Source: Octopus bimaculoides (lineage: Eukaryota). From it: a DNA stretch of 48,908 nt. The stretch is from the NCBI RefSeq assembly GCF_001194135.2, contig NC_068996.1:34177415-34226322 (forward strand). The letters run 5' to 3'. A program made the position numbers and the translations under genes. The notes below the pieces were generated by a model, which searched no databases, was not told where the DNA came from, and saw nothing but the letters and a program-made list of their open reading frames with translations. How positions within the stretch are numbered: position 1 is the stretch's first letter; each line of letters starts with the position of its first letter. Shown here piece after piece: positions 1,115-42,611 of the stretch.

Positions 1115-1167
<53 letters not shown>

Positions 1168-1330
1168 TTAACGTCCGTTTTCCATGCTGGCATGGATGGG
1201 ATGGTTTGACTGAAAACTGGTTAGCTGCTCCAGGTTCTAATCTGATTTGGTATAATTTCTACAGCTGGATACCCTTCCTAACGTCAACCACTCCAAAAGT
1301 GTGGTGAGTGTTTTGTATCTGTTTCGATCA
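1115..1330 (-). mobile_element. 3' tail of the abundant RTE-type LINE family with (CAT)n microsatellite
   Basis: (ATC)n followed by TTTAACGTCCGTTTTCCATGCTGGCATGG, matching the 3' end of the long RTE copy at 42612. Confidence 0.65.
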
Positions 1331-3542: not shown

Positions 3543-3830
3543 GGTGTATAAATTTTATTTTTGGTGCTGCTGGACTGGCTCCTGTGCAGGTGGCACATGA
3601 AATACACCATTTTGAGCGTGGCCGTAATCAGTACCACCTTGAATGGCCTTCGTGCCGGTGGCACGCAAAAAGCACCCACTACACTCTCGGAGTGGTTGGC
3701 GTTAGGAAGGGCATCAAGCTGTAGAAACTCTACCAAATCAGATTGGAGCCTGATGTAGCCATCTGGTTCGAAGTCCTCAGTCAAATCGTCCAACCCATGC
3801 TAGCACGGAACGCGGACGTTAAACGATGAT
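3543..3830 (+). mobile_element. RTE-family 3' tail, + orientation
   Basis: Near-identical reverse complement of 42620-42870, ending ...CGGACGTTAAACGATGAT. Confidence 0.7.
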
Positions 3831-4001: not shown

Positions 4002-4712
4002 TCTTGACTCTGTCCATTATTTACGCTGCATTCTGTTTTGGCTTTTGTTTGTTTTTGTGCATGTGTGTGTATGTATGCATGCATGTATGCGTGCATGTGT
4101 GTGTATGTATGTCTGTGTGTGTGTATATGTATATATGTATGTGTGTGTATGTATATATGTATGTGTGTGTTTGCATGTATGTATGTATGTATTCTGTATT
4201 TGTGTGGGTTTTTTTTATGTATGTGTGTGCATGTGTAAGGCACAATAAGAAAATGACTCTCCCCAGACAGAACAGAATATGCTTCAACACACGAAATCAC
4301 ATAAAAAAATCTTGCAAACCAAATCCAAAAACGAAATATATATATATAATTATAAGATCTGGTAATTAGTCATATATTAATATATTAATTAATATCGATT
4401 AATTATCAGAGGGCCAGCACATTTAAAGAATCAAAGAGATTCAGAAATATTATCTGCAATCTCAGGGGATTAAGGTACATTTTAAAAATAACGTCGACCA
4501 CTAACGTGGACAATTAATGCGCTAGAAATAGATCACATTTTGTGTCTATTAAGACTTAAAAGGTTCTCAACATGAAATATAGCAGCATACCAAAAACGTG
4601 AGAGGGCAAGACNNNNNNNNNNNNNNNNNNNNNNNNNNNNNNNNNNNNNNNNNNNNNNNNNNNNNNNNNNNNNNNNNNNNNNNNNNNNNNNNNNNNNNNN
4701 NNNNNNNNNNNN

Positions 4713-5263
4713 TCCGTATGACTCTGGTCCATCCACTCCATCTCTCTATAGGGGTCTTCCTAATCATAGAGGTAATTGTTGGTGGTCTACCTCTTAAACG
4801 TCTACTAGGGCAGAAATCTCTAAGGTCGTATCTATCTAGATATACATCGTCATATGTCAATCTAAGTAGGAGGCCCAGTTCTTCTGTGTTGACATTGTGG
4901 AACTCCACTTCGTTCTCGTTGATCATCTCCACGCACTTTTCCACCGCAAAATCCACGTCGATAGATGGGTATAGTGATACCACATCCATGCTACCCACTA
5001 TACACCCCGTTAGGTCGCAGGTGTTACAGTCGTTGATCCTGCTGAGATCTTCCGTGCTGTCACAAACATCAGGTGACATCCGGATTATGGGGCGTATGAT
5101 CATTGAGAGGAAGTAAGAAATCCTGTAGTTGCTAGCAACATTCGCTCCACAGACTGGTTTTGTTGGTGGTCCCACTACAGGATCAGTAGTTACTTTGTGG
5201 TCCTTACAAAGCCCATACAGCGTCGGGATATCGTTGTTCCAGGCTTGGAAATTGTTGGCTATA
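4713..5263 (-). pseudogene. PLE reverse transcriptase fragment
   Basis: Open frame containing LYGLCKDHK / PTKPV / SMDVVSLYPSI RT motifs. It is truncated upstream at the junction with the repeat at 5264. Confidence 0.8.
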
Positions 5264-5593
5264 TAGAAATAATACATTTCTAAATCTCTCAGAGAGACTT
5301 AAGCAGTAGTGATGCGATAAAGTAGTTGTATACTGCCAACTTAACGTGACAGTCCCAATAACATGTCCCTGAATGCAGGCTAGGCTGGGTGGAGGAGTTT
5401 GTATTCCCCTCGCAAACATAAGGGCACAGGAAATGTGTCAAGGCCGACAGGAAGCGGTCCAGCTTCCTAAGGCTAAATAGCAGTAGTATATTCCCTTATT
5501 GGGACTGTCACGTTAAGTTGGCAGTATACAACTACTTTATCGCATCACTACTGCTTAAGTCTCTCTGAGAGATTTAGAAAAGTATTATTTCTA
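5264..5593. repeat. Fold-back: 98-bp inverted arms (5264-5361 / 5496-5593) around a 134-bp spacer, part of the hammerhead repeat
   Basis: The arms are reverse complements with one mismatch (97/98). The spacer and right arm match 11433-11612. Confidence 0.95.
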
Positions 5594-5675
5594 ATTTTTG
5601 TAATCAGTGAATGTGTTTCACTGAAATAATATATGTTTGTGAAGGTTTGACAGACTTTTTCAACCAGCTGGTCGT
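5361..5675 (+). mobile_element. Retrozyme-like monomer, locus 1, portion left of the LINE insertion
   Basis: 5361-5540 matches 11433-11612 (about 12 differences in 180 bp by eye). Joining 5675 to 11398 restores a 350-bp monomer period between hammerhead cleavage sites. Confidence 0.75.
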
Positions 5676-5870
5676 TTTTTCCTTGTGCTCGATAGAATAT
5701 TTTGATTTTTGAATCGACATTTTTGTTGCTGCTACTGTGTGAGTTCGATTCCGTTTGTTTCTTCAGTGTATTATAACTGTAATTTTGTTAACTGTTTGTA
5801 TAACAGCCATTTTCGCCCTACGGGGCTGAAAATTACCTCTAAAAAATTTTTTCTTGTCATTGTGACAAGA

Positions 5871-6746
5871 ATGGCTTCCATGTTGTCAGCTGAAGGCGAC
5901 CTTCCCATGGAGGGAGAACGTATTCAAAAAGGAAAACCAAGTTTCTCACAGGCCGTTGGAGGAAATACCATCGAGTTGAAAGTGGCTAAGGAAAGTCTAT
6001 ATGCATTTAGAAAGTATATTCAGAAGGTGGATGGTGAAACAAAGCTGATTCCACCCCCCGAGACAGTCAACGTATTAAAAGAAAAAATTGTGGTGTATAA
6101 AGTTTATAATGTCACGGAAAGAAAAATCGCAGAGGCTCGTAACGAACTTGTAGAGATGTGTTTGGCACCAATTTGGTCAAAAATTCGCCACATCAACTGG
6201 GGTATAAGAAGTACAACAATTGAAGTTCACTTCAACTCGGCTGAAGTGGCGGGAGAAGTTTCAACAGAAACTTTGAAAAATAAAACAATTATGCTGCTGC
6301 CCACATACATGGGAAAAAGAACGGCACGAGTGACAGTGGAGGATATACCATTTGGATACGACGTGTTGTGGGTAGCAGCAGCTGTAATTTTCGATGTTGA
6401 GGAGAATATCAACATTCTGAGCATGAGGAGAAAAGAAGCAACGAAGTTGGTGAGGGCAGACGCTTGAAATTGTAGTCATAATACCTTCGAAAATTTGCCC
6501 AACAGGGTGTTTGTGGGGGAGGGGCATACTATTCGCGTGTCAGTGGAGGGACGTCGACCCAGATGTTTTAAGTGTGGACAAAAGGGTCACGTTTGCTCGA
6601 CCTGCATAAAAAAGCAAAACACCGCTAAAGCGAGTGACGCCCCTCCTTCGAAAGCGGACGAGGAAAACAAAAAAACAACAACAGTCACTGTTGCAGTTGA
6701 AGGTAAAAAACTGAAGGAAAAAAAAAACAAGAACAAGAAAATGTGA
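5871..6746 (+). pseudogene. LINE ORF1 (gag-like, CCHC zinc knuckle), disrupted
   Basis: ATG at 5871 and a stop at 6465-6467. The downstream VSVEGRRPRCFKCGQKGHVCSTC is CX2CX4HX4C, followed by a basic tail. Confidence 0.75.
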
Positions 6747-7597
6747 GGACGACTGAGAAAATAGTTGCCTAGGAAGAAAGTGAACCAACAGAAATGGAAT
6801 TCACAACAGTTTCAAACAAAAGGAAGAAACAACACACACCANNNNNNNNNNNNNNNNNNNNNNNNNNNNNNNNNNNNNNNNNNNNNNNNNNNNNNNNNNN
6901 NNNNNNNNNNNNNNNNNNNNNNNNNNNNNNNNNNNNNNNNNNNNNNNNNNNNNNNNNNNNNNNNNNNNNNNNNNNNNNNNNNNNNNNNNNNNNNNNNNNN
7001 NNNNNNNNNNNNNNNNNNNNNNNNNNNNNNNNNNNNNNNNNNNNNNNNNNNNNNNNNNNNNNNNNNNNNNNNNNNNNNNNNNNNNNNNNNNNNNNNNNNN
7101 NNNNNNNNNNNNNNNNNNNNNNNNNNNNNNNNNNNNNNNNNNNNNNNNNNNNNNNNNNNNNNNNNNNNNNNNNNNNNNNNNNNNNNNNNNNNNNNNNNNN
7201 NNNNNNNNNNNNNNNNNNNNNNNNNNNNNNNNNNNNNNNNNNNNNNNNNNNNNNNNNNNNNNNNNNNNNNNNNNNNNNNNNNNNNNNNNNNNNNNNNNNN
7301 NNNNNNNNNNNNNNNNNNNNNNNNNNNNNNNNNNNNNNNNNNNNNNNNNNNNNNNNNNNNNNNNNNNNNNNNNNNNNNNNNNNNNNNNNNNNNNNNNNNN
7401 NNNNNNNNNNNNNNNNNNNNNNNNNNNNNNNNNNNNNNNNNNNNNNNNNNNNNNNNNNNNNNNNNNNNNNNNNNNNNNNNNNNNNNNNNCGAGAAAGGGC
7501 CCAGTAGAAGCGGAAGGAGTAGGGGAGGTTGGCAAACAAAAAGTGCCATGCTCCCTCCCACAACCGTAAGTGCTTATTTTTACCTTTATTTTTCCCG

Positions 7598-10500
7598 ATG
7601 ATTAAGTTGGGTAGTTTAAATGTACATGGAATGAGGTCGAAATGGAAACAAGCTTGTTTTCTGCACGACCTCATTTCACATAGAATAGATGTGGCTGTGA
7701 TCACCGAGTCCAAGATGAAGGGACCTGAAGCGTTCTCGCCCCTCCTCAATGGTTACGAGAAATTTATTTCTCCGAGCCGGAGGGGAGGTGCAGGCGTGGC
7801 AGTCCTTATCAGGAAAAACTTGGGCTTACTGATATGTACTGTCTTTCTGGACCCAGAAGGTAGGCTGGTCGTCCTAGATGTAACACATGAAAGTAAGCAG
7901 TCCTTCAGGTTGGTGGCTGCCTATGCTCCTAACGGACAGGGGCAGTCGGGTTTTTTTCAGAACCTGGAGTACTTTTTATTGACGTCTAAAACTGTAGTTT
8001 TGCTAGCGAACTTCAACACTATTCTCAATGCACGCATCGATAGTGTAGGCTCCACCAATAGGAAAGGGAATCCTTACCTCAAGGGTCTACTAGAGAGCTT
8101 TAATCTAGTAGACCGCTACCGACTAGATGAGCCGAGCGTTCCACAGTGGACGTGGAGTAATAACGACGGCTCACACAGATCGTACATAGACAGAATTTTT
8201 GTTAAGGAAAGAGATAAGCATAGCTTTAGCTGTCCACATTTTTGTATTGTGACTTACACAGATCACAAACTTGTGATGTGTGAGGTTCATATAGATAAGT
8301 GTCATAGACAGGGACCTGGGTATTGGAAAATGAACAAGTCTATTTTGGCTTGTAAAACTTTCCATACCCGGATTAAGGAGTTAGTGCAGAGGGCATTATG
8401 TGGCACCATCATTAATAATAGATGGTGGCACGCCCTCAAGAGAGCCATCCGTCTTGAGTCCATTAGATTTAGCAATCAGCTAAGTTTAGATAGAACTAGA
8501 ATAGAGGGTGACTTAGTCAAGAGTCTAGATGAGGCAATGGAATCTGGCTCCGCATCCAGAGTGATGGCGGCGAGAACGGTCTTGTACCGTCACCTCAATG
8601 CCAAACACGAAGGGTGCCGAGTCAGAGCTAAGTTATGTGCTGGGAAACAAGAAGGTATCAACGTAGCCAGATGAGCTTGCCGTGTGGNNNNNNNNNNNNN
8701 NNNNNNNNNNNNNNNNNNNNNNNNNNNNNNNNNNNNNNNNNNNNNNNNNNNNNNNNNNNNNNNNNNNNNNNNNNNNNNNNNNNNNNNNNNNNNNNNNNNN
8801 NNNNNNNNNNNNNNNNNNNNNNNNNNNNNNNNNNNNNNNNNNNNNNNNNNNNNNNNNNNNNNNNNNNNNNNNNNNNNNNNNNNNNNNNNNNNNNNNNNNN
8901 NNNNNNNNNNNNNNNNNNNNNNNNNNNNNNNNNNNNNNNNNNNNNNNNNNNNNNNNNNNNNNNNNNNNNNNNNNNNNNNNNNNNNNNNNNNNNNNNNNNN
9001 NNNNNNNNNNNNNNNNNNNNNNNNNNNNNNNNNNNNNNNNNNNNNNNNNNNNNNNNNNNNNNNNNNNNNNNNNNNNNNNNNNNNNNNNNNNNNNNNNNNN
9101 NNNNNGTTGTGACGCTAATCCAGAAGGACCCAAGCAAGGGGGATAGCATTAGTAATTACAGGCCCATAACTCTACTTAACGTAGAGTTAAAGATTTTGGC
9201 CAAGGTGTTAGCTAAAAGGTTGACGGCTGTCATGGAGAAGCTTGTCGGGAAGGCACAAACCTGTGCAATCCCAGGCAGGTCGATCCAGGACAACCTTCAC
9301 CTTCTCCGCTACACCTTAGACAGGGTTGGGAAATTAGCCGGCAAAGGAGGGGCATTGGTCCACTTAGACCAAAGTAAAGCATTCGATAGGGGAGACCATC
9401 GGTACCTGGAGGCCATCCTCGAAGCAGCTGGGATAGGCCCGGGCTTTCGCGAGTGGATCTCTGCTATGTACAGCAGCATCAAGTCCACCGTCCAGATAAA
9501 CGGTTACCTAACGGAACCGTTTTCAATCAAGCGGTCTGTTCGCCAAGGGTGTCCCTTGTCTCCGGTCCTGTATGTTTTAGCCCTGCAGAGGCTGGAGAAG
9601 TTAGGCAGCAACCCTAATGAGATTGGATGCGGTAAGTTCACTTCTGCTTATGCTGACGACGTCACTCTCATCGTGTCTAAAGAAGCACAACTACTTCATG
9701 TAGAAGATGCTCTCCGAAGATACGAAGTGGTGGCAGGAGCAAAAGTTAACAAAGACAAGTTCATCNNNNNNNNNNNNNNNNNNNNNNNNNNNNNNNNNNN
9801 NNNNNNNNNNNNNNNNNNNNNNNNNNNNNNNNNNNNNNNNNNNNNNNNNNNNNNNNNNNNNNNNNNNNNNNNNNNNNNNNNNNNNNNNNNNNNNNNNNNN
9901 NNNNNNNNNNNNNNNNNNNNNNNNNNNNNNNNNNNNNNNNNNNNNNNNNNNNNNNNNNNNNNNNNNNNNNNNNNNNNNNNNNNNNNNNNNNNNNNNNNNN
10001 NNNNNNNNNNNNNNNNNNNNNNNNNNNNNNNNNNNNNNNNNNNNNNNNNNNNNNNNNNNNNNNNNNNNNNNNNNNNNNNNNNNNNNNNNNNNNNNNNNNN
10101 NNNNNNNNNNNNNNNNNNNNNNNNNNNNNNNNNNNNNNNNNNNNNNNNNNNNNNNNNNNNNNNNNNNNNNNNNNNNNNNNNNNNNNNNNNNNNNNNNNNN
10201 NNNNNNNNNNNNNNNNNNNNNNNNNNNNNNNNNNNNNNNNNNNNNNNNNNNNNNNNNNNNNNNNNNNNNNNNNNNNNNNNNNNNNNNNNNNNNNNNNNNN
10301 NNNNNNNNNNNNNNNNNNNNNNNNNNNNNNNNNNNNNNNNNNNNNNNNNNNNNNNNNNNNNNNNNNNNNNNNNNNNNNNNNNNNNNNNNNNNNNNNNNNN
10401 NNNNNNNNNNNNNNNNNNNNNNNNNNNNNNNNNNNNNNNNNNNNNNNNNNNNNNNNNNNNNNNNNNNNNNNNNNNNNNNNNNNNNNNNNNNNNNNNNNNN

Positions 10501-11001
10501 NNNNNNNNNNNNNNNNNNNNNNNNNNNNNNNNNNNNNNNNNNNNNNNNNNNNNNNNNNNNNNNNNNNNNNNNNNNNNNNNNNNNNNNNNNNNNNNNNNNN
10601 NNNNNNNNNNNNNNNNNNNNNNNNNNNNNNNNNNNNNNNNNNNNNNNNNNNNNNNNNNNNNNNNNNNNNNTGATAATTTATGTAGAACATATGTTGTCGC
10701 ATCTGGGACGAGTACAGCTGTCGGCTGAGTCTATGATAAAGATGATACCGCCAACTGGACTCTCAAAGGAAGGTGAGGCTAGTTTTTCTGTACGGTAGCA
10801 GTGTTGAAAGAGTGTATATGGAGGACAAGAATAGAAGGTTTTGTGACAGGGTCCTACATATCCGGCCCTGGATTGCTGACTTACTTCAAATACCATCTGA
10901 AGAGCAAGATAGGGCTGGAAAAGAGGACCCTGTCAGCTAGAGTATATGAACAGAGATGGAAGGAAGTGGTGAAAAAGGTGGGTGTGAGTCTCCCAAACTA
11001 A
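7598..11001 (+). pseudogene. LINE ORF2 (apurinic-like endonuclease + reverse transcriptase), Tx1-like; gaps and stops
   Basis: APE motifs LNVHG, ITE, YAP, SYIDRIF, TDH and the GPGYWKMN linker. RT motifs YRPITLLN, LDQSKAFD, RQGCPLSP and YADD (9106-9765). TGA at 8672. Confidence 0.9.
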
Positions 11002-11397
11002 TCATCGGGGAAATAAAAGGCGAGCTGCTGGGCCTTATAGGCTGCCAGGTTGAAGAATCAATCGTTTTATTATAAAATATATATATATGTGTGAATGTGT
11101 ATGTGTGTGTGTATGTATATGGGTGTATATATATATGTGTATATATATGTATATATATATGTGTGTGTGTGTGTGTATGTATGTATATGTATGTCTGTAT
11201 ATTTAAAAGGAAAAAAAAAGGGAGAAAAAAAGTCAACGAAGATATGAACTTTAAATTTTGATATATATAAAGACAATCGTTAATTTTTAAAAAACATCGA
11301 ACTCATGCATTTTGTATATTTGTTTGTCCTGTATTGTACCCATTTCTATATTTGATCCATAGTGATCCTAATAAAAATTTTTCAACCAGCTGGTCGT

Positions 11398-11612
11398 GCT
11401 GCTTCAGGCTGATGATGAGCAAAGACTCAGAAACATGTCCCTGAATGCACACTAAGCTGGGTGGAGGAGTTTGTCTCCCCTTCGTAAACATAAGGACACA
11501 GGAAATGTGTCAAGGCCAACAGGAAGCAGTCCAGCTTCCTAGGGCTAAATAGCAGTAGTATATTCCCTTATTGGGACCGTCACGTTAAGTTGGCAGTATA
11601 CAACTACTTTAT
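11398..11612 (+). mobile_element. Retrozyme-like monomer, locus 1, portion right of the LINE, ending at (TA)n
   Basis: Hammerhead plus a 180-bp direct repeat of 5361-5540, truncated at ACTTTAT and followed by ATATATAT. Confidence 0.75.
11401..11448 (+). ncRNA. Type I hammerhead ribozyme; predicted cleavage after C11439 (GUC)
   Basis: Stem I TTCAGG (11403-08)/CCTGAA (11440-45), core CTGATGA (11409-15), stem II TGAG-caaaga-CTCA, GAA (11430-32), palindromic stem III ACATGT (11433-38), then C17. Confidence 0.85.
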
Positions 11613-11735
11613 ATATATATTTGAAGAAAAGCAACAAAAATTCAATAGGTTATAGCAGTATGTACGTTTCGTACAACATTTTAAGTACCACATTTAATCT
11701 TTTGATTAAATCTATATTATTATTATATATATATG

Positions 11736-11767
<32 letters not shown>

Positions 11768-11877
11768 TACATAAAGATGTATATATGTATGTATAAATAT
11801 GTGTTGATGTGTGTGTGTGTGTATGATAGACACTCCCTCCCGTCAGTCTTGACATATGACAACCTACTCTTTCTTTG

Positions 11878-12772
11878 TCAGTTATAATGCTTATGTTGAA
11901 TGTGACATTTGAGTCCTGCTAACAATTTGCAAAGAAGCCTGCAGATGTTGCGAGTATGAGGATTATGGGTCAGTGTAGGCAGTATACTTGCAGCTGCTTT
12001 TCTCCTTTGCCTTGCCCTCCTAGGCCTGCTAACGCTGGTTGCAACAAAGTTTCGTATACCATTTTGACACAACGATCTCCATCTTGTTTGCTCAAAGGTG
12101 TTATGAGCTCTATTGACTACTGAGAGGTTACTCTTCAGCTTATCCATATATCTGAGCTGTTGTTGACCAACATTCCTGTGTCCAATATCAAGCTGGCTGT
12201 ACATGAGAACTTTGGGTATTCTTCCATCACTCATTTTGATGACATGGCCAGCCCAGCACAACTGCGACTGCATAAGAAAGCTCTTGGTTCCATCAGTTTT
12301 ACACTTGCTAAACAGATCAGCATTAGAGGCTCTGTCTTTTAATGAGTAACCACAGATTGTCATGAGACAGCCTTTGTGGAAGATGTCTAGTTGGTTAATG
12401 TGCTGTCTGTAGGGTGTCCATGATTCTGAGCCATATAAGAGCTCATGATTCTGAGCTCTTATCATTGTTCCAGGTTTTATGAGAGCTGTGCATTTTACCT
12501 ATCAGCTGCTGGACATCTGTGTTGTTATCACTGAACCAATCTTGATGTTTACAAATAGGAAGTTCAAGAGCCTCTATGGATGCAGAGAGCATTGCATCAT
12601 GCATAGCCTTCCAAGATGATTTGAAAGCATCACTGATATCAAGTGTTGAGTGCGGCTTGATAAAAAGCTCAGCCTGCTTTCCAGTGGTTTTCAAAGGCAG
12701 GAAATTAATGTGTTTAATTAATGTGCTCTTGTGTGCTACTGGTAACATGTAATCCAGTACAACTTGTTGCAT
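11878..12772 (-). mobile_element. RTE-clade LINE remnant with the RT core deleted
   Basis: The EN-RT linker (KHQDWFSDNN) abuts the post-RT region (LLYGSESWT, LCWAGHVIKMSDGRIPK) near 12455. Confidence 0.7.
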
Positions 12773-12949
12773 GATCAGGTCATTAGTGACTAAACTGGCA
12801 CCACCAGGCTTGCTTGGTGAGGAAAGTGATTGTTGGATACCCTGTGGGACAAAAAATAAAACCCATCAAAGGATGGAGGAACTCATGAATAGTCAATGGC
12901 CATCCAACAATATACACACACACACACACACATTTCATCATTTTTTTTC

Positions 12950-13115
12950 TGGTTTTTTTTTGTTCTCTCTCCATTTTTTCCACTCAATCTTTTCTGTCAA
13001 AGAGCACTGGCTTGTAACATCAAAACTCTTCCATTCTTCCCGAGCGTCAAACTAATACATCTGCTGGTTGGTTCCCTCACTTGTCTGCATCTTTTGTTTT
13101 CTGTAAATTTTAACT
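12950..13115 (+). repeat. Second, more decayed copy of the 2590-2790 repeat
   Basis: Shared TTCCCGAGCGTCAAACTAATACATC. A degenerate motif TTTT-CTGTCAA-A-GAGC...-GTA-ACAT-C-AAAA lies at 12990-13025. Confidence 0.5.
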
Positions 13116-13141
13116 TTATACATGTATACATATACATACAT

Positions 13142-13174
<33 letters not shown>

Positions 13175-13390
13175 CGTGTGCATGCATGCACGCACGCATG
13201 TGTGTGTGTGTGTACATATTCTGCTTTTAGGATCTGTGTTTCACTGAAATTAGCAATCTGCTTGAGCTTCACATATTGCTAGTCATCCCAGTCCTTTGTC
13301 ATTTCCTCTGTGAGGTTCAACCTTCTGAATTCAATCTCCACTACTTCATCCCACATATTCCTGAATTACCTCTTCCACAATCTTCATCTA

Positions 13391-14686
13391 TTATGTAGTC
13401 TGGAAAGTTCTGAGTGTTTTTAATATGCAAAAAGAGATATAAATGATTAGCCCTTCAATAAATTTTATTCAATAAAATAATTTCCATTATTATTGATGGC
13501 CTTTTCCCATTTATCAGGCAATTTAAATATTCCATCAGCATATAGATGTTTTCAATCTAGTGTGGATTCTTTGCCATCAAATTTGATGGCAAAGAATCCA
13601 AACTAGATCGAAAACATCTATAAAATTTGACTGGTTTTGAAGAAAAAAAATCATCTAGATGCACTTTAACTCTGTCTAAATCATTAAATGTTTTTCTTTG
13701 CAACAAGTTCTGTAGAGACAAAAACACATGGTAGTTGGATGGTGCAATATCAGGAGAATATGGTGGATGGCATAAGAGATCTAAGCCAAGTTCATGTAAC
13801 TTAGTTTGGGTAGTCAAATATAAATGTGCTCGGGCATTTTTTTGGTTCAATTTAGCTAGCTGACAACAGTACACAGCAGAATTAATGGCCTGATTTTGTA
13901 GGAGAAGCTCATAATAAATAATGCCTTTATGATCCCACCAAACACAAAGCATTGCTTTTTTAGTATGGATATTCGTCTTTGGTTGCTGTTTGGGGAGATC
14001 CTTATGCAAACTCCAGGATCTCTTTTGCACTACATTTTCATACACAATCCAGTCACAAGTTGTTTAAAAAAAGGCATGCTTTCATTCCATTTCAAAAGCA
14101 TATCACAAACAGAATACTGGTCCAAGCAATTCTTTTCTGAGAGTTTGTGAGGGACTCATACCTTATGAGAAATGTATCCTAGCTTCACTAAGTGTTCATG
14201 AGCCATACTTTTAGAAACTTCCAACTCCTCTGCAAATTCTCTAGTTGTGATATTTGAGTTTTCTTTGATATTTTGCTATCAAAACATCTTCATTCAATTT
14301 TGAAGAGCTTCCACTGCGACTGTTATCTTCCAAGCTAAACTCTCCAGCTTTAAATTTTACAAACCACCTTTTGAACAGTTGATTCAGATACAGCATCATC
14401 ACCATAAACTTCCCAAATGTTTTTGCAAGTCTTTGCTGCACTTTCTTTTTTTTTAAAAAAGCGAAAACATTACAATGCAAATATGAAATTTTTGGTTATC
14501 CATTTCAAATGTCAATAAAGGGTAACTGGAATGAAAGATAAATCTATTTTTAGTCAGTAACAAAGAAGAGATGCACTACCACTTCGAGCAGTGCCAAAGT
14601 TTTAATTGTGTTACATTTTAGGTGTGTTCAATGAAGCATTAAAAGATTTAGCTTAAAAATGCTCAGAACTTTCCAGACAACCCTAA
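13391..14686 (-). mobile_element. Mariner transposon, full-length size (1296 bp), defective transposase
   Basis: Imperfect TIRs (GTCTGGAAAGTTCTGAG / CTCAGAACTTTCCAGAC) flanked by TA at 13389-90 and 14687-88. Motifs MLCVWWD, NARAH and HPPYSPDIAPSNYHVF, with frameshifts. Confidence 0.9.
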
Positions 14687-16869
14687 TAACATAAGTGATT
14701 GAGATTTCTTTATGCATCCATGCCTATCATGTGACCATACCAGTACAGCCTTCTTTTTTGCACACTACATCTGATTCTTTTTATATCTAGTTGTTCTCTC
14801 AACATTGGCTATGTCCTCTTATTTCATACAATATTCCTCTATATATCATCTATCCTGTGATTCAATCATTCTGTACTGCAGAGGTTCTGTCAAAGAACAC
14901 AGTATATGTTTAGGGAACTCCTGAACAGCTTTTTCCAGGGAACCAAACTGAATGACTTTTACTCAACTTCTGTAAGACTATTTCCTGAAATGTGAGGACA
15001 GTCTCCTTGTATTACACAGTCTACAATTCTCCCATTTCCAAAACGAGCTAACTCTTGTGTCAAAGAAATGAAAGAACCATAACTGACTTTATGGAATCTT
15101 GATTTCCTCTACATCTTGACCAGAATTATTCCAAAAGCTCAGTGACATGTATGGACTGTTTCATCTCTCCTGAAATTTAAAAAATGAAATCTGGAGAACC
15201 ATATAGGCTATACATATGTATATAAAACAAAGAAAGATGTTAAAATTGTCTGTGGTAGATTCCATAAAATTTAATGTATTATTTTTTTTTAAAAACCTGA
15301 TTTAAGAAAACAAATCATAGTTTGTTAAAGTAGCAAACTGAAAGTGATAAAGATTTGAAATATGAGTTTACTTATAATTATTTTCCCATTTTAATTATTG
15401 TTATGCTGACATGAATGTGAAAGCAGGGGAAATAATTCCTGTATTAGCAACCTAGCTGTCTATGTAACTATCCAGTAGAGAAAATGTATAAAAGGTGCTG
15501 GGAACTAATAGGGAGTCATCTTGAAACAAAGAGTAATGAAAAACAAGAGTTGGCAGAAACATTTAAACCTATTGAAGACTATAACTCTTATATTAATTGG
15601 CTTTATTTTGCTCATCAAATAAATAACAGAATTCTGCTGTGTATAAATGTTAATATGGAATGAGATGAAACTAGAAATTGAAGATGTATAGAAATAATAT
15701 TGTGGGGTATTTAATACACAGGCTACAGCTCTTATAAAACAGTAGGAAAATACAAAAATGAAAACTACTCTTAATCATCTACAATGAAATATATTGTGAA
15801 AAATAAGGAATCCAACTGAGATGAATAAATTGTAATAAATCATAAAAGCATACTCCTGTTGGCTACATGCTTGAAAATGGCCATCATTTATTTGCTATCA
15901 ACTAGGATGTTTTTCTCAATAATTCATTTCTCATCATTCTTGTTGTGTCCATTACCATCCCACCCCTAGTTCAACACTAATCACTAAGACCAGTCCTTCC
16001 ACTCCAGATCATTATCCTTCTGGAATTTCCTCCCTGCTGTTGTACTTCCTGCAGATGTTAACTTATAAAAGTTTAAGGGAACATTAATGGTATTGATCAT
16101 ACTTGACTAGAAGGGCCTGTAAAAGTCCTCCAGAACCAGCAAGTGAAAAAAGATAGCAACTTTATTTTTTATTTTCAACAACTACAAGATACAAACAGTG
16201 TCCATGGTAGTGAATATATGAAGTTTTCTTTCATTGTAGAGAAAAAACCTTAACTGAAGCTCCTTGTAGGATCCACTCTTTTTAATGAGTCCATCATAGT
16301 CCTGACTACTTCATGTTTCCTATCTCTAAGTCATTTCTTTCTTTCTTTAAAAAAAAAGCAGGGCTCTGCTCTCTAGCTATTCACCAGTTGTAGATCCTAC
16401 ATCACAATGAAATATTCTTTGGCCTCATTATCAAATGACTCCCTGGTAAAAAAAAAACAGGCCTTGTACCTAAATTAGAAACATCACACACATAGCATAT
16501 GCATAGAGAAGCTTGCTCAATGTAAGCATATGTCATAAGAAATAAATATACTGTTGCTGCTTGATTTAATATTGGTTTAAAATTTTGTTACAAGGCCAGC
16601 AAGTTAGGGTTAGGGGTAAGTTGATTATATCAATCCTAGTGGTGAACTGGTACTTATTTTATCAACTTAGAAAGGATGAAAGGCAAAGTTGACCATGGCA
16701 GAATTTGAACTCAAGAATGTACAGATAGAGAAAATACTGCTAAGCATTTTGTCCAGCATGCTAGCAATTTTGCAAGCTCACCATCCTGCTATTTAATTTG
16801 ATATTGATTTTCTTACATAAATAATTATATGACATGCATTCAAAAAGAATCCAATTTTATTTTTCCCCA

Positions 16870-17560: not shown

Positions 17561-17676
17561 GATGCTCATTACGGCCATCACATGATGTCTAGACATTGAT
17601 ATACACAAATAAATACAGACACACACATATGTAAATAATAGTTATGTATCTGTATATTTATATGTACATATATCAA

Positions 17677-19594
17677 ATCATCCTCATCATCATTTAACAT
17701 CCACTTTCCATGCTGGCATGGATTAGACAGTTTGATTGAGGGCTGGCAAGGTTTCTACAGCTGGTGCTTGCTACATGCCAGCCCGGTGACACTGGCATCT
17801 GTCATGCTCGAATGGAGTTTTTTACAAGCCACCAGCACGGGAGCTACTCTTGGCCACAACAATGATTTCACTTGGCTCAACAGGTCTTCTCAAGCATGCC
17901 CAATGATTGAAGGGGTACTTTTTAAACAGGCCAATTATGTGACACTGGCATCGGCCATGGCTATAATCTCACTTAGCTTGCCGGGGTCTTCTCAAGCACA
18001 GTATATCCTCAGAGGTCTCGATTGCCTGACATTGCCTCTGTAAGGCCCAACTTTCGAAAGTCATGTTCACCATCTCATCCCGTGTCTTCCTGAGTCTATC
18101 TCTTACACAGGTTCCCTCCACTGTTAAGGTGTGACACTTCTTCACAGAGCTTTCCTCATCCATAGATAACACATGACCATACCGATGCAGTCATCTCTCT
18201 TGCACACCACATCTGATGCTTCTTATATCCAACCTTTCTCTCAGGGCACTTACACTCTGTTGTGTATGCACACTGACACTACACATCCAGCGGAGCATAC
18301 TAGCTTCATTTCTTTCAAGTCTATGCATGTCCTCAGCAGTTATAGCCCATGTTTTACTGCTGTGTAGCATGACTGTTCATGCACATGCAGTCTACCTTTC
18401 ACTCTGAATGAGAGGCACTTTGATACCAGCAACATTGCCCAGGTTATTTTTATTCTAGCAGCTATGCTCTCAGAGTATCCATCCTCGCTACTGACTTGGT
18501 CACCTAGGTAACAGAAGCTATCAACTACTTCTAGTTTTTCCCACTGGCATATGATGGAATCTGTTTCCTGTACATCTTCGGAATTTATTGCTGCTGTGCA
18601 TCTGATCTGCCACACACAAAAACTATCTTTCCAGTTAACCTTCTTTTGATATTGCTACACCGCTTATGTGTCCACAGCTCACACCAGTTACATCTTATGG
18701 GGTTTCTAGTTATGCTTTTCCTACAGTTGGAGGACTATGATGAATAAGAGGGGGCTGAGAACTGATCCTTGGTGAACCTCTACTCCTACCCAGAATTCTT
18801 CACTACACTTGTTGCCAACCTTCACCTTACTGACAGCATCCCTGTATATAGCTTGTACAGCTCTCACCAACCACTCATCTATCCTTAGTTTTCACATTGA
18901 CCACCAGGTAAGGGATAGTGGGATTCTGTCAAAGGCTTTCTCCATGTCAATGAAAGCCAAGTACAGAAGTTTATCTTTGGCTAGGAATTTCTCCTGCAGC
19001 TGTCTAACCAGAAATATAGCATCAGTGGTGCTTCTCCCTGGCACAAACCCAAATTGCATCTCATCTAAACTAACTCTCTCTCTAATTAGTGGAGTTGTCT
19101 TTCATCATTTGACTTTCATGAATTTCATCACTTGATCCTACAACTTGATACCTCTGTAATTATTCCTATCTAATGCATCACCTTTACTTTTGTAGCAGTT
19201 GACTATGGTGCTGCTACACTAGTCATTGGGTATGACTCCTTTATGAATCACCTGGTTGTCTATACAGATGACTAGACTATAGCCTACACCATCAGATATT
19301 TTAAGCATCTCAGCAGTGATTCCTGATGGGCTGGGGGCTTTCCCTGTCTTCATACCCTTAATTGCTTTGTCTACCAAGGTACTGTCAATTTGAATAGCTG
19401 GACCCTCTGTTGGGTCAAAATTTGGCAGACTCTCTTTCTCCCATTCATTCTCTTCATTTAGCAGCTATTCATAGTGTTGTCTCCAAGTCTCTCTCTTTGC
19501 AGCATCATTAAATGCAAGTGAGCCGTCATCCATGCAGACACATTTCTTTTCTATGACATCACAATTTTCTCTTAAACATTGTCTTGCAATCTGA

Positions 19595-19597
<3 letters not shown>
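17677..19597 (-). mobile_element. RTE-family LINE, 5'-truncated and decayed (RT + 3' UTR)
   Basis: Homologous to 42612-45300. The minus strand encodes AFIDMEKAFDRIP and GVHQGSVLSPLLFII, and ends in an (ATG)n tail. Confidence 0.8.
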
Positions 19598-19632
<35 letters not shown>

Positions 19633-19635
<3 letters not shown>

Positions 19636-20356
19636 TAAAGATTATTTGCCAACATAATGTGGCAGTCCCAGTTGGGATGAATGCTACTGTTGTTTAGCCC
19701 CAGGAAACATCGTCTCCAGCTGGCTATACAACACACAATCTGTGTCCTTATATTTTCAAACAGGGGAGTTTAGTATCCCCACTCAGCACAAAACAATATC
19801 TGTGGACCATGGTTTCTGGGTTAATTTCCTTCCTCGGCACAGAATAACTGCTCAGCTAGAGGTGGTGTTGCTAAATCCCCATTTGAAAATATAAATAATT
19901 TTCAAAGTAATACACAGTCACTGATCTAATAAATAGAAACATTATTATTTCTAAATCTTTCAACGAGAGACATTCAGTAGCAGTACTTTAAAGTAAAGAT
20001 TATTTGCCACCATAATGTGGCAGTCTTAGTTGAGATGAATGTTACTGTCATTTAACCCCAGGAAACCTCATCTCCAGCTGGCTATATGATACACAATCTG
20101 TGTCCTTATATTTTTGAACAAGAAAGTTTAGCATCCCAACTCAGCACAAAGCAATATCTGCGAACTGCGGTTTCTGAAGGACACAGATTGTGTGTCATAT
20201 AGCCAGCTGGAGACGATGTTTCCTGGGGCTATACAACAGTAATATCTGTCCCAACCAAGACTGCCTCATTATGTTGGCAAATAGTCTTTACTTTAAAGTA
20301 CTGTTACTAAATGTCACTCGTTGAGAGATTTAGAAATTAAAAAATGTTTCTATTTA
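19633..20356 (-). mobile_element. Retrozyme-like locus 2: 358-bp tandem repeat plus inverted arm
   Basis: Direct repeat AGTAAAGATTATTTGCC at 19634 and 19992 (period 358). The arm at 20177-20356 is inverted relative to about 19930-20108. It is homologous throughout to locus 1. Confidence 0.75.
19799..19843 (-). ncRNA. Type I hammerhead ribozyme (U4C core variant); predicted GUC cleavage between 19805 and 19804
   Basis: The minus strand reads TCTGTG-CCGAGGA-a-GGaaattaacCC-a-GAA-ACCATGGT-C-CACAGA, giving a 6-bp stem I and an 8-nt palindromic stem III. Confidence 0.7.
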
Positions 20357-21545: not shown

Positions 21546-24500
21546 ATGATGGAGTCCAAGATAATGTTTTTTAAAGAAAGGCGAATGTTTAAAGGCTGAA
21601 ACATAAGTTTTGATCATTAGTTTGTTGGATCAGGATTGTCCCAGGGCTATACAACAACATCATCATCATCAACAACAACAACAACAACCACATGGAAGGA
21701 ATTCGATATTCTTTCTGTTTGATCCTGAGAATATGGTCTGACTATTTACAGACTACAATCAAAATTGAGGTTCAGTTCCAAAAGCCAAGTGCATTCAGAG
21801 CCCAAAAGAAAACAGCAATATTGTGTCTTTCTACCAAATATATGAAATTAATAACTATAATTAGAGAAACCCATACAATAATTAGCAACATTTCTGATGA
21901 AAGAAATGTTAAATAAGGTTATGTATTTAAATTTTTTTTTCAGGCATTACATTGTACCTTTGCCCAGTCTTTTTACTTAATGGTATTAGCTTCTCTTTTT
22001 CTGACAATGCTGAATATGTGAATGGTCAGGTAGAAATGTTAGATCATTGAAAAAAATTTCTTGTGGTATCTAATTATGTTATGAATTCAACTTTACTTTT
22101 CATCCTCTGGGTTGATAAAATACGATATCAGTGAAATACTAGGATAGATTCAATATTTCTAGAAAATATCCTAGATGTGAATGAAATTATAGTAGAAGAC
22201 TAGGTGATGAAATATGATCTTTGGTTGCTGAGCCTCAAGGAGGCAATGACAAGTGACTGAGACTTCTGGCGATTTGCTGTTCTTGAGAAGACGTGAAGCT
22301 AGTGAATCAGGGTCATTGTGAGTGACAATGACACATAAAAGGTACTTGTGCCAGTGACATGTCAGAAACATCTAGTACACTCTGTAAAATGGTTGACATT
22401 AGGAAGGGCATCCATTCATAGAAACCATGTCAAAACAGATCACTGGAGCCTGATGCAGCTGTCTGGCTTACCAGTTCCAGTCAAACCAGCCAACCCATGT
22501 CAGCATGAAAAATAGACATTAAATGATGATGATGATTACGACGATGACAACTAACTTTATCTTGCATCCTCTCAGGTTTGTTAAAAATAAGAAACCAGTG
22601 AAATACTAAGGTAGATTTAATAATCCTCTAAAACACCCTAGATGTGAATGGAATTATAATAGATTTAGAACTATAATGTAGAAGAAAGGAAAACTCTGAG
22701 GTGTTCATGGCTCTTATAATTCCAGTCAGACTGGATGCAATTATCTTCCTTAAAGTTATCACTAGTGTGAAATGGTGTAAACTTGTATTAAACTGGATTA
22801 TAAATTAGATGAGGGTCTCCACTTAGTATTAGCCAATCTGTGCTGATGTTTATTCCCTAATCTTGTAGATGATAAGATACTGCAGGGTATGGCGGAAGCT
22901 TTCAGTGAGTTTATTTTGAGTTTCAAGTCACTTCATTTATGCAATTATTTTCTTTAGAATAGCTATGACTATCACAACTTGTTTCTCAACCTCATCTACC
23001 TTACTCTGCATTCGTCAGAGATAGCAGCCAGATCTTCCTCAAATCATACCCTGCTGTCATATTTAAAGACAGGTTACTAAATAATGTGGAGAGAGAGAGA
23101 GAATGATTTACTCAGAGCATGTTTTTAATTATATATTCCTTTGAACATTGGAAAGAGTTTTTTAACATTAAAAATACATTAATGTAGATAAATTCACATT
23201 CATAAATTGAAATAAGGCAAGATATTTGAAGAAGCAATTATTTTTAAAAATAACGAATGACAGAATGAAAGCTATTTTGTTTGTATTGATTATGTTACTA
23301 TATTAATTAGACAAAAGAGCAACAGCCGTGTTAAATAAAAAAAAATTTTAACAATTATATAATCAATAAATTCCACGTAGACCAAAATTATTGATAGCTG
23401 ACATGTGACATTTTAAAGGTTCATTTATTCCCAAACGAACATCATTTCATCATTCACCGCTTTCATGTAGCATGATAAATATGTAGTTGTTACTATTGAT
23501 TTATTCGTACTAAATTTTGATAGGAGAGGAGTATGATCAATGGAATCCACTTCAGCATTTTGCTGGACCTGAAAGAACTTCATTCTTACAATATAGAAAT
23601 TCAGAATATTGTGAACTATTCACTCCAGTGCTTTGTCGTTTTGCCGTCTACTCTGTAGTAAATTACAGATATGTTGTTAATCGTTTCCGAGTAATAAATA
23701 TATATACAAATAATTGCCAAAACCAAATTACTAGCTGATAAGAGGAATTTTTTATTCTTAATTCGGTTTACATTATTCATTGTACCCCATCTCCCATTTT
23801 CGATAAGGAAAAGAAAAATTAATACTTACTTTTACGAGCCCCAACAATATATATAGTTATTAAAAAATAATTAAGAATTTGTTGCCGAAGCAATCCAAAT
23901 ATTGCGTCAAGGTTGCCACATTAGACAGGAACCGGGTTACGCTATTATTTTATTTTCGATTTGGAGCAAAACTTACTGCTTTAAAATTTTATTTCTTGGA
24001 TGCAAAAATCCCATCCAATGTCTAAGTAAATTAAAATTGATCCACAAGTAATCTTTTTACATACATATTCAGTTTGGACCAATTTTTTAAAGCATTCTGC
24101 TACTTTCTGAAAATTTACGATCCTGTGCTATTTTATGAAATTGACAAAGTATTCCTGCGATCAGACTTCAGTGATTTAATAATGCTTAGTAATTAAAATA
24201 ATCTCTATACGGAACACTTGGATAAGGAGGGTTACACTAGAGTACTTAAATTAGTTTTTTCAACGTTGAGAGGAAGTCGGACGTATTAACGTACCAATTG
24301 ACTTGGTGCAGTTTCACGGAAGACTATTTAGAATCATATTCTAGAAATTAGTTTAGATTTTATAGGCCTTCTATTAAATAGAATTCGGCCTCGCAGATTA
24401 AAAAGGGATGCACATTGTCGAAAATTCGGGTCGTTAGATTTGTTTGTGTAACGTCCTACCAATAAACTCTTTATTACTTTTTATCCAGGAATTCATCGAG

Positions 24501-40480: not shown

Positions 40481-40614
40481 CTGACAAAAAGGTTATACAA
40501 GATCTGAGTCCTATTAGTCAGCCTGTTATGCTTTTCTCTTTCACATTGAAATAGCTTTAACATTAAAAACTTGATAGTTAATTTTATGTACAATTTTATG
40601 AAATTGTAAAATCA

Positions 40615-42559: not shown

Positions 42560-42611
42560 GTAAGTTATTCAGTTTTATTGTTTTACAAAAGTCTAAATTT
42601 AGTTTGAATAT

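What the first reader, a model, noticed from the sequence alone, without database searches (positions are those of the whole stretch)
5656..11448. Tx1-like LINE inserted next to a hammerhead ribozyme: candidate retrozyme-targeting retrotransposon
Seen: a 5.7-kb LINE is bounded by a perfect 20-bp duplication (TTTTTCAACCAGCTGGTCGT, containing the 10-bp palindrome ACCAGCTGGT). Removing the LINE restores a tandem 350-bp repeat, and the duplicated site ends 3 bp before the hammerhead fold (11401). Established: Tx1-clade LINEs are often sequence-specific, with targets including Tx1D transposons, U2 snRNA, tRNA spacers, 5S rDNA and microsatellites. Inference: this family may specifically target the hammerhead repeat, a type of target I do not know to be described. 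One copy cannot prove specificity.
Basis: partly seen in the sequence, partly recalled or inferred. Interest (0 to 1): 0.85.

Follow-up and report, generated by a model that had tools for sequence, protein, structure and literature searches.

The report
Octopus LINE that homes to hammerhead repeats
A dead L1/Tx1-type jumping gene sits, with a perfect 20-bp target duplication, a few bases upstream of a hammerhead ribozyme inside a short Penelope-style repeat. An independent copy in the Octopus bimaculoides genome sits at exactly the same spot in another copy of that repeat, so this LINE family probably targets the ribozyme repeat.

Summary
An exact 20-bp duplication (5656-5675, 11378-11397) bounds a 5.7-kb LINE with ORF1 (CCHC knuckle), APE, RT and a C-terminal region. 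The copy is dead: two nonsense codons, at least one frameshift, three gaps.

Removing the LINE restores a 350-nt unit that ends in a type I hammerhead (11403-11445). A descriptor finds this motif once in about 230 kb. Rfam does not detect it.

The "tandem repeat" is really one Penelope-style insertion: an inverted 5'-truncated arm, 1.5 tandem units and a (TA)n end.

The decisive result came from an ORF1 homologue, which led to an O. bimaculoides locus (L005). It holds a second copy of the same LINE (90-94% identical in ORF2) at the same nucleotide position of a different, 85%-identical repeat copy. Its 19-bp duplication carries a locus-specific variant, its 5' end differs, and the outer flanks are unrelated. 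A third, related full-length LINE starts 11 bp further on. Chance and simple duplication are therefore unlikely.

Targeting of other transposons by Tx1-clade LINEs is known, but I found no report of a ribozyme repeat as target. Tx1-group placement by phylogeny and a genome-wide census remain undone.

The parts
5264..5361 (-). Inverted, 5'-truncated arm of the hammerhead repeat (reverse complement of 5496-5593)
   Evidence: the repeat finder: 98 nt, 99% complementary. This arrangement is typical of Penelope-like insertions (PMC8557442).
5362..5655 (+). Upstream part of repeat unit 1. It starts with the 3' half of a hammerhead (AACATGTC, predicted cleavage after 5367).
   Evidence: 93% identical to 11432-11612. 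Colinear with the uninterrupted related unit at 19636-19995.
5656..5675 (+). Target-site duplication, copy 1 (TTTTTCAACCAGCTGGTCGT)
   Evidence: Exact 20/20 match, only two copies in the window. The homologous 19-bp duplication flanks the second LINE copy in L005.
5676..11377 (+). L1/Tx1-type LINE, 5702 bp including 1971 N. 5' UTR 5676-5870; ORF1 5871-6746; ORF2 7598-11001; 3' UTR 11002-11377 with a (TG/TA)n stretch at about 11076-11200, ending in AATAAAAA.
   Evidence: ORFs and Pfam. Colinear with relatives. 90-94% identical to the L005 copy. Human L1 ORF2p is the best solved-structure match.
5871..6746 (+). ORF1, with an in-frame TGA at 6465-6467 and a CCHC knuckle at 6564-6605
   Evidence: Translation. 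Homologues in O. bimaculoides. The intact LINE-C ORF1 has Pfam zf-CCHC above cut-off.
7598..8671 (+). ORF2 N-terminal part: apurinic-type endonuclease plus linker, ended by a nonsense TGA at 8672-8674
   Evidence: Pfam Exo_endo_phos 1.1e-9. L1 endonuclease structures match. LINE-C reads W at the stop position.
9106..9765 (+). ORF2 reverse transcriptase domain (YADD box)
   Evidence: Pfam RVT_1 2.3e-29.
10673..11001 (+). ORF2 C-terminal end, with a frameshift near 10797
   Evidence: Translation. 84-94% aa identity to the L005 copy. The zf-RVT domain of the family lies in the gap just upstream (seen in LINE-C).
11378..11397 (+). Target-site duplication, copy 2
   Evidence: The 3' junction TAATAAAAA|TTTTTCAA is identical in L005.
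11403..11445 (+). Predicted type I hammerhead ribozyme: UUCAGG-CUGAUGA-UGAG(CAAAGA)CUCA-GAAAC-AU-GUC^CCUGAA, cleavage after C11439. Helix III is only 2 bp within the palindrome ACAUGU, the dimer-type arrangement.
   Evidence: Descriptor hit, chance 0.01 per window. Helices I and II appear in the minimum-energy fold. Helix I is kept through compensatory changes in the related unit at 19.8 kb. Not detected by Rfam.
11440..11612 (+). Partial repeat unit 2, ending where (TA)n begins (11613 onward)
   Evidence: 93% identical to 5368-5540. The related locus at 19636 ends at the same unit position, followed by (TA)n.

Best explanation
An L1/Tx1-type LINE family of octopus integrates preferentially, and probably sequence-specifically, at one site of a short hammerhead-bearing repeat. 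That repeat is a non-autonomous Penelope-style element, of the kind called an animal 'retrozyme'.

Shown:
- In two diverged copies of the repeat, the LINE lies in the same orientation at the same nucleotide.
- The 3' junction is identical in both (…TAATAAAAA|TTTTTCAA…), and there is no added poly(A) tail.
- The target duplications are 20 and 19 bp.
- A related LINE starts 11 bp downstream in one of the two loci.

Inferred:
- The element's endonuclease nicks the bottom strand at 5'-TTGAAAAA^G(Y)CTGTC-3', and the top strand 19-20 nt away at 5'-CTGGTCG(T)^GCT-3'.
- Reverse transcription is primed at the bottom-strand nick.
- The terminal AAUAAA would place RNA 3' ends within downstream target sequence. 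Read-through RNA could therefore anneal to the nicked target and fix the start point, as proposed for other target-specific LINEs.
- The insertion leaves the hammerhead downstream intact.

Both copies examined are dead relics.
For: TSD and LINE anatomy.

Second copy, in O. bimaculoides L005:
- LINE 9783-15392, with APE 94%, RT 92.7% and the 3' part 89.6% identical to the window copy.
- TSD TTTTTCAAACAGCTGGTCG at 9764-9782 and 15393-15411.
- The upstream flank 9629-9783 matches window 5522-5675 at 84.6%.

Independence of the two insertions:
- The outer flanks are not colinear.
- The repeat has a different truncation and inversion architecture.
- The TSD variant (A versus C at position 9) is shared by both TSD copies within each locus.
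- The LINE 5' ends differ, and the 5' UTR/ORF1 module is only 68% nt / 54% aa identical.
- The flanks (85%) are more diverged than ORF2 (90-94%).

Third event: full-length LINE-C (about 73% nt identical) starts at L005 15423, 11 bp after the TSD.

Empty site: the uninterrupted related unit at 19636-19995 aligns straight through the insertion point.

Precedent: many Tx1-clade families prefer specific targets, including other transposons (PMC4494074; PMC1950540).
Against: - Only two copies of the family plus one relative were examined. I could not run a genome-wide census, so the fraction of copies at this site is unknown.
- Octopus vulgaris has 13 recently active L1-Tx1 families with 421 insertions (PMC13282606), which shows these LINEs can be dispersed.
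- Neither the LINE nor the repeat was found in 105 kb of O. vulgaris.
- LINE-C's 3' junction lies in a gap or beyond the locus, so its exact target site is unknown.
- The nearest relatives in Argonauta hians sit at a different sequence, (ATCT)n plus a 160-bp repeat.
- The primer end (…GAAAAA-3') is not complementary to the LINE's A-rich 3' end, so the annealing step rests on assumed read-through RNA.
- Both assemblies are gapped short-read drafts.
Confidence: 0.7

Rival explanations
1. Loose preference rather than true target specificity. The endonuclease likes a short motif or DNA shape (for example AAAAA/G next to the CAGCTG palindrome) that occurs in many places. The hammerhead repeat is then just one frequently hit target among many.
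For: Only 2-3 events were seen. LINE-C's 5' junction is 11 bp from that of the other two. L1-Tx1 elements are numerous in octopus. The 10-bp palindrome itself is not conserved between the two targets.
Against: Both the bottom-strand and top-strand nick positions agree to within 1 nt in two diverged targets. With a short degenerate motif, a randomly drawn second copy would almost never fall in the same repeat family at the same base.
Confidence: 0.15
2. One insertion, later copied. The repeat plus LINE was duplicated as a block (segmental duplication), or mobilised as a composite together with its flanks, so the shared 'target' is inherited rather than chosen twice.
For: The flanks on both sides of the second copy are homologous to those in the window. 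Penelope-style elements form complex tandem and inverted structures.
Against: - The TSD differs between loci but is identical within each locus.
- The LINE 5' ends differ and the 5' UTR/ORF1 is only 68% identical, while ORF2 is 90-94% identical.
- The flanks are more diverged (85%) than ORF2.
- The repeat architecture differs, and homology stops at the repeat's edges.
Confidence: 0.08
3. Chance. A non-specific LINE happened to land in an abundant repeat, and the nearness to the ribozyme means nothing.
For: A single copy cannot show specificity. About half or more of octopus genomes is repeats.
Against: A second, independently found copy is at the identical position. By my estimate, even with 10,000 copies of the repeat the chance of hitting the same base in a 2.7-Gb genome is about 4e-6.
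Confidence: 0.02
4. Assembly artefact. Short-read assemblers joined LINE ends to collapsed repeat contigs, creating false junctions.
For: Both loci come from gapped draft scaffolds. Penelope-style inverted repeats are known to upset short-read assemblies.
Against: All four junctions lie inside contiguous sequence, not at gaps. The two loci differ at 6-15% of positions, so they are not one collapsed consensus. TSDs match within each locus.
Confidence: 0.05

Closest known systems
Tx1L of Xenopus laevis, which inserts into the Tx1D DNA transposon, and crocodilian Tx1-Mar, Tx1-8_Crp and Tx1-4_AMi, which insert into Mariner-N4_AMi or LTR retrotransposons (PMC4494074, PMC1950540)
   Same: These are APE-type LINEs of the L1/Tx1 lineage that integrate at a defined site inside another family of mobile elements, giving nested composite elements. 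Tx1L's endonuclease is sequence-specific in vitro.
   Different: The target here is a short hammerhead-ribozyme repeat of Penelope style, a target class I found in no paper. Placement within the Tx1 clade is not yet shown by phylogeny. The endonuclease is untested.
Keno (U2 snRNA genes), Dewa (tRNA arrays), Mutsu (5S rDNA), Kibi and Koshi (microsatellites): Tx1-clade, Kojima and Fujiwara 2004, as cited in PMC4494074
   Same: Target-specific members of the same broad lineage. Their targets are multicopy, transcribed or repetitive sequences, which act as safe havens.
   Different: Those targets are host RNA genes or simple repeats, not a self-cleaving ribozyme element.
R2 in 28S rDNA, with its HDV-like ribozyme and co-transcription with the target (Eickbush and Eickbush 2010, cited in PMC4494074)
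   Same: This is a possible functional analogy only. A target-specific LINE is co-transcribed with its target, a ribozyme defines an RNA end, and target-derived RNA helps to position reverse transcription.
   Different: R2 has a restriction-like endonuclease, and the ribozyme is its own, at the 5' end. Here the ribozyme belongs to the target and lies 3' of the LINE. No processing has been shown.
Animal non-LTR retrozymes and the pseudo-LTRs of Penelope-like elements (PMC7229834; bioRxiv 10.64898/2026.07.22.740005; PMC8557442)
   Same: This is the target, not the LINE. It is a 350-nt unit with a type I hammerhead that has a very short helix III. It is AT-rich and strongly structured as a circle. 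It forms a partial tandem plus an inverted 5'-truncated copy, and inserts at (TA)n.
   Different: Only about 1.5 units are present per locus rather than long arrays. Helix II closes with U-A instead of G-C. Rfam models do not score it. Expression and cleavage are untested.

Membership tests
L1 superfamily LINE (L1/Tx1) | ORF2 with an N-terminal APE endonuclease, a central RT and a C-terminal zinc-binding (zf-RVT/CCHC) region | tested here: met
   Exo_endo_phos and RVT_1 in the window copy. zf-RVT at 8.7e-11 in the related LINE-C; in the window copy that region lies in gap 3.
L1 superfamily LINE (L1/Tx1) | Closer to L1 ORF2p than to other LINE groups | tested here: met
   Among solved structures, human L1 ORF2p scores 2.5e-32 against 4.5e-15 for R2 proteins. 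The L1 endonuclease is the best APE match. Only a few LINE clades have solved structures, so this is a weak test.
Tx1 clade | RT phylogeny groups the element with Tx1L, Keno, Dewa, Mutsu, Kibi and Koshi | not tested
   No reference Tx1 sequences were available to the tools, and the hits carried no informative names. Octopus genomes are annotated as carrying L1-Tx1 families, which is circumstantial only.
Tx1 clade | Type I ORF1 protein (RRM plus CCHC knuckle) rather than the mammalian Transposase_22 type | tested here: inconclusive
   A CCHC knuckle is present: by eye in the window, and with Pfam zf-CCHC above cut-off in LINE-C. No RRM and no Transposase_22 were detected. PMC5203782 links RRM/CCHC ORF1 types to Tx1.
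Target-specific LINE | Independent copies at the same nucleotide of the same target sequence, each with its own TSD | tested here: met
   Window and L005: same site, same orientation, TSDs of 20 and 19 bp with a locus-specific variant. The sample is n = 2, plus a related LINE 11 bp away.
Target-specific LINE | Most copies in the genome occupy that target | not testable with these tools
   No DNA search of octopus genomes was available. Scans of metagenome and viral contigs found nothing.
Hammerhead ribozyme, type I | Conserved core CUGANGA…GAAA…NUH^ with helices I, II and III in type I topology | tested here: met
   The descriptor gives a single hit at 11403-11445, expected 0.01 per window by chance. 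Helix I is kept through compensatory changes in the related unit.
Hammerhead ribozyme, type I | Match to the curated Rfam hammerhead covariance models | tested here: not met
   No hammerhead family appears at gathering score or at E<=10. Likely reasons are the 2-bp helix III with a 2-nt loop and the U-A closing pair of helix II. Self-cleavage is untested.
Animal non-LTR retrozyme / non-autonomous Penelope-like element | Repeats of 170-400 bp carrying a type I hammerhead, whose RNA is predicted to be highly base-paired as a circle | tested here: met
   The unit is 350 nt. The circular fold is -125 kcal/mol against -83 +/- 5.5 for mononucleotide shuffles (z = -7.6). Size and features match PMC7229834.
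Animal non-LTR retrozyme / non-autonomous Penelope-like element | Penelope-style insertion architecture: partial tandem (pseudo-LTR), inverted 5'-truncated copy at the 5' end, microsatellite bias | tested here: met
   Seen at window locus 1, window locus 2 and L005, as described in PMC8557442. (TA)n lies at the ends.
Animal non-LTR retrozyme / non-autonomous Penelope-like element | Expressed as self-cleaved linear and circular RNA | not testable with these tools
   No transcript data were available.

The most novel reading that the evidence does not exclude
The LINE does more than use the hammerhead repeat as a safe landing site. It exploits the ribozyme.

Insertion a few bases upstream of an intact hammerhead means that read-through LINE transcripts would be cut 62 nt past the LINE's end. 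This would give an RNA whose 3' tail carries the 20-nt target sequence. That tail could pair with the nicked target DNA (…CCAGCTGGTTGAAAAA-3') and fix the start of reverse transcription exactly at the LINE's last base.

This would be a LINE that borrows another retroelement's ribozyme for 3'-end formation and homing.
Probability: 0.15. Interest if true: 0.85.

Novelty: new member of a known kind. Interest (0 to 1): 0.6.

Why it matters
Target-specific LINEs are rare natural examples of programmable, site-directed DNA insertion. They also show how selfish elements limit harm to the host by landing in expendable multicopy sequences.

A family that homes to a hammerhead-ribozyme repeat would add a new class of target: a self-cleaving, probably circular-RNA-producing retroelement. 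It would link two poorly understood groups in cephalopod genomes, L1-Tx1 LINEs and Penelope-derived retrozymes.

It also offers a compact 20-30-bp recognition site and an endonuclease that can be tested directly. It raises a testable idea as well: that a LINE can use a neighbour's ribozyme to shape its own RNA.

If the census shows strict specificity, these nested insertions would also be useful markers for dating bursts of both element families in octopods.

Tried and rejected
- Rfam over the whole window at gathering score, and over 11300-11700 at E<=10, found no hammerhead. I therefore wrote a descriptor with a chance control.
- No second LINE copy exists inside the window.
- A protein search with APE+RT+C-terminus found nothing above about 52-60% identity. 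The best named hit was Argonauta hians. Cluster look-ups gave no useful names for clade assignment.
- The Argonauta locus holds two related LINEs, but at a different sequence, (ATCT)n plus a 160-bp repeat, with no hammerhead.
- The nearest non-cephalopod relatives (ENA ERZ21867824) form tandem LINE arrays with no Rfam hit between copies.
- Exact-pattern scans for the LINE 3' end and for the hammerhead in metagenome and viral contigs returned nothing.
- I tested whether the RT-like ORF next to the repeat (4567-5277, minus strand) would lead to more repeat copies. Its O. vulgaris homologues gave 105 kb with neither the repeat nor the LINE, and they carry no Pfam domain. I do not call that ORF a Penelope RT.
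- P0184, a second O. bimaculoides ORF1 homologue, is not on record in the contig collection.
- LINE-C's 3' junction falls in a gap or off the end of L005.
- The endonuclease hairpin-loop comparison with the Tx1L graft structure was uninformative: 9 residues as in L1, with an NDGSH motif vaguely like Tx1L's RDGH.
- The 10-bp palindrome is rejected as a required target feature, because the second target has only CAGCTG.
Full report
**1. What is in the window**

The 20-mer TTTTTCAACCAGCTGGTCGT occurs exactly twice, at 5656-5675 and 11378-11397. The match stops sharply on both sides.

Between the two copies lies a LINE in plus orientation:
- A 195-nt 5' UTR.
- ORF1 (5871-6746), with a CX2CX4HX4C knuckle and one in-frame TGA.
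- ORF2 starting at 7598, with an apurinic-type endonuclease (Pfam Exo_endo_phos, 1e-9), a reverse transcriptase (RVT_1, 2e-29) and a C-terminal piece ending at 11001.
- A 3' UTR with an internal (TG/TA)n stretch, ending in AATAAAAA directly against the second 20-mer.

The copy is dead. It has nonsense codons at 6465 and 8672 and a frameshift near 10797.

**2. The gaps**

The sequenced pieces fall in the expected order and spacing on 1150-aa ORF2 proteins of relatives.
- Gap 3 (905 N) corresponds to 897 real bases in a second copy of the family.
- Gap 2 fits the expected roughly 135 aa.
- Gap 1 cannot be checked, because the second copy has a gap at the same place. A related element has only 468 bp there, so the N-run may be too long.
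- Frame continuity cannot be established, and ORF2 is broken regardless.

**3. The target**

Taking out the LINE and one 20-mer gives a 350-nt unit (5368-5675 plus 11398-11439), followed by a partial second unit (11440-11612, 93% identical).

The unit ends in UUCAGG-CUGAUGA-UGAG(CAAAGA)CUCA-GAAAC-AU-GUC^CCUGAA.
- Rfam does not report a hammerhead, even at E<=10.
- A type I descriptor hits this place only. Chance expectation is 0.01 per window, and there is no other hit in about 230 kb examined.
- Helices I and II appear in the minimum-energy fold.
- Helix III is 2 bp inside the palindrome ACAUGU. Amphibian retrozyme hammerheads likewise have a short helix III and cleave efficiently only as dimers (PMC7229834).
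- As a circle, the unit folds at -125 kcal/mol against -83 +/- 5.5 for mononucleotide shuffles.

The repeat is not a long array. Upstream sits an inverted, 5'-truncated arm (5264-5361, 99% complementary to 5496-5593), and the structure ends at (TA)n.

A second, roughly 70%-related locus on the minus strand (19636-20356) has the same build:
- 1.5 tandem units, an inverted arm and a (TA)n end.
- A degenerate core (CCGAGGA).
- A helix I maintained by compensatory changes.

A partial tandem, an inverted 5'-truncated copy, hammerheads in the pseudo-LTR and a microsatellite bias are the published signature of Penelope-like insertions and their non-autonomous derivatives (PMC8557442). Animal retrozymes have recently been argued to be exactly such derivatives (bioRxiv 10.64898/2026.07.22.740005).

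The uninterrupted unit at locus 2 aligns straight through the LINE insertion point. The LINE is therefore an insertion into a pre-existing unit.

**4. The test of specificity**

No other copy of the LINE is in the window. The ORF2 search found nothing closer than 52-60% identity, with Argonauta hians the closest named hit.

The ORF1 search found two O. bimaculoides proteins. One, LOC128247805, could be located on chromosome CM046605.1, giving locus L005.

L005 carries a second copy of the same family at 9783-15392:
- APE 94%, RT 92.7% and the 3' part 89.6% identical.
- It is flanked by TTTTTCAAACAGCTGGTCG at 9764-9782 and 15393-15411.
- Its upstream flank is the same stretch of the hammerhead repeat (84.6% to window 5522-5675).
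- The 3' junction TAATAAAAA|TTTTTCAA… is identical.

The two are independent events, not one duplicated locus:
- Sequences outside the repeat do not match.
- The repeat is truncated and inverted differently.
- The TSD differs at one base between loci but is identical within each locus.
- The LINE 5' ends differ.
- The 5' UTR/ORF1 module is only 68% nt / 54% aa identical, although ORF2 is 90-94% identical.

Eleven bases after the downstream TSD in L005 (GCTACTTCAGC, the homologue of GCTGCTTCAGG that precedes CUGAUGA in the window), a third LINE begins. This full-length, related element, LINE-C, is about 73% identical. It has an intact 274-aa ORF1 with zf-CCHC and a zf-RVT domain at the ORF2 C-terminus. 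Its 5' terminus is homologous to that of the window copy. Its 3' junction is lost in a gap.

That makes three insertion events within about 30 bp of the same repeat, in two repeat copies. L005 was found through protein similarity, not through its flanks. By my estimate the chance of a random second hit on the same base is of the order of 1e-6 to 1e-5.

**5. Mechanism**

Shown are the positions of the junctions and duplications. Everything else is inferred by standard target-primed reverse transcription logic.

The TSD begins with TTTTT on the LINE's sense strand. The primed nick is therefore on the bottom strand at 5'-TTGAAAAA^GYCTGTC-3', not at an L1-like TTTT/AA site. The second nick is 19-20 nt away on the top strand.

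The primer end cannot pair with the LINE's A-rich terminus. Yet both copies start precisely after AATAAAAA with no tail. This suggests one of two things: recognition of the 3' UTR by the RT, or annealing of read-through RNA that carries downstream target sequence. Co-transcription with the target is thought to reinforce specificity in other target-specific LINEs (PMC4494074). The AAUAAA signal at the very end would place cleavage and polyadenylation inside the target sequence.

The hammerhead stays intact 5 nt beyond the TSD, so it could also trim such read-through RNA. This is the novel reading and has no direct support.

**6. Comparison with known elements**

The architecture (APE-RT-zf-RVT, CCHC ORF1) and the best structural match (human L1 ORF2p, 2.5e-32, against R2 at 4.5e-15) place the element in the L1 superfamily. 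Tx1-clade membership could not be tested by phylogeny.

Many Tx1-clade families are target-specific. Several target other transposons: Tx1L into Tx1D, Tx1-Mar into a mariner, and Tx1-8_Crp and Tx1-4_AMi into LTR elements (PMC4494074; PMC1950540). The present case is therefore a new member of a known kind with a new sort of target.

I found no paper describing a LINE that targets hammerhead repeats or retrozymes. A recent O. vulgaris repeat study lists L1-Tx1 and Penelope families but mentions neither hammerheads nor retrozymes.

**7. Limits**

- The sample is tiny, both assemblies are gapped drafts, and the hammerhead and the endonuclease are untested.
- Argonauta relatives sit at another sequence. 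Two copies only 67-70% alike are both followed by (ATCT)n plus the same 160-bp repeat. This hints at target preference in the lineage, but for a different target.
- The window's species is an Octopus. Its LINE has a 90-94% identical paralogue in O. bimaculoides, and a neighbouring repeat ORF is 78-88% identical to O. vulgaris proteins. The species itself was not determined.

Noticed in passing
window 19636-20356 (minus strand): A second, roughly 70%-related hammerhead-type repeat locus: a 357-nt unit, 1.5 tandem units plus an inverted arm (20177-20356), ending in (TA)19 at 19596-19634. The ribozyme core is degenerate (CCGAGGA), but helix I is kept by compensatory changes. The site homologous to the LINE target is diverged and empty.
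   Followed up: partly
window 4567-5277 (minus strand): An ORF fragment with RT-like motifs seen by eye (LYGLCKDHK…, GSMDVVSLYPSIDVD) abuts the inverted arm of the repeat. It is 78-88% identical to many Octopus vulgaris 'hypothetical' proteins but has no Pfam domain. It is not linked to the hammerhead repeat in 105 kb of O. vulgaris.
   Followed up: partly
L005 15423-20288 (O. bimaculoides CM046605.1): LINE-C, a full-length relative (about 73% nt) of the window's LINE, has an intact 274-aa ORF1 and starts 11 bp after the other LINE's duplication. Its 3' end is lost in a gap. It could be a second hit on the same target with a longer duplication.
   Followed up: partly
L004 9761-12965 and 13400-19074 (Argonauta hians BAAFZT010000021.1): Two related LINEs only 67-70% identical to each other both end in …GGCTAATAAAGAA, followed by (ATCT)n and the same 160-bp sequence (99% identical). 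This suggests a target preference of their own, either for the microsatellite or for a SINE-like repeat.
   Followed up: partly
L001/L002 (ENA ERZ21867824 ctg88761c): The closest non-cephalopod relatives (52% in RT) form a head-to-tail tandem array of ORF1+ORF2 with a period of about 6.82 kb. No Rfam family lies in the 1.2-kb spacers. The organism is unknown.
   Followed up: no
window 13557-14045 (minus strand): A fragment of a mariner-type transposase (Pfam Transposase_1, 1.3e-23).
   Followed up: no
window 18727-19482 and 11878-12465 (both minus strand): Fragments of other, unrelated LINEs. One is an RT piece about 27% identical to the relatives of the main LINE. The other is an ORF that by eye resembles a LINE ORF2 C-terminus. 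Each lies just beyond the (TA)n end of a hammerhead repeat locus.
   Followed up: no
window 1148-1314, 1985-2565, 3657-3830, 17653-18318, 22202-22536, 30415-30509, 40165-40897, 42608-43418: An abundant interspersed repeat of a few hundred bp, 70-88% identical to L005 4983-5856. It is probably a SINE-like family shared across loci.
   Followed up: no
window 6842-7489 and L005 10715-11272: Both assemblies have a gap at the same place in the LINE, between ORF1 and ORF2. This suggests a stretch that short reads cannot assemble.
   Followed up: no
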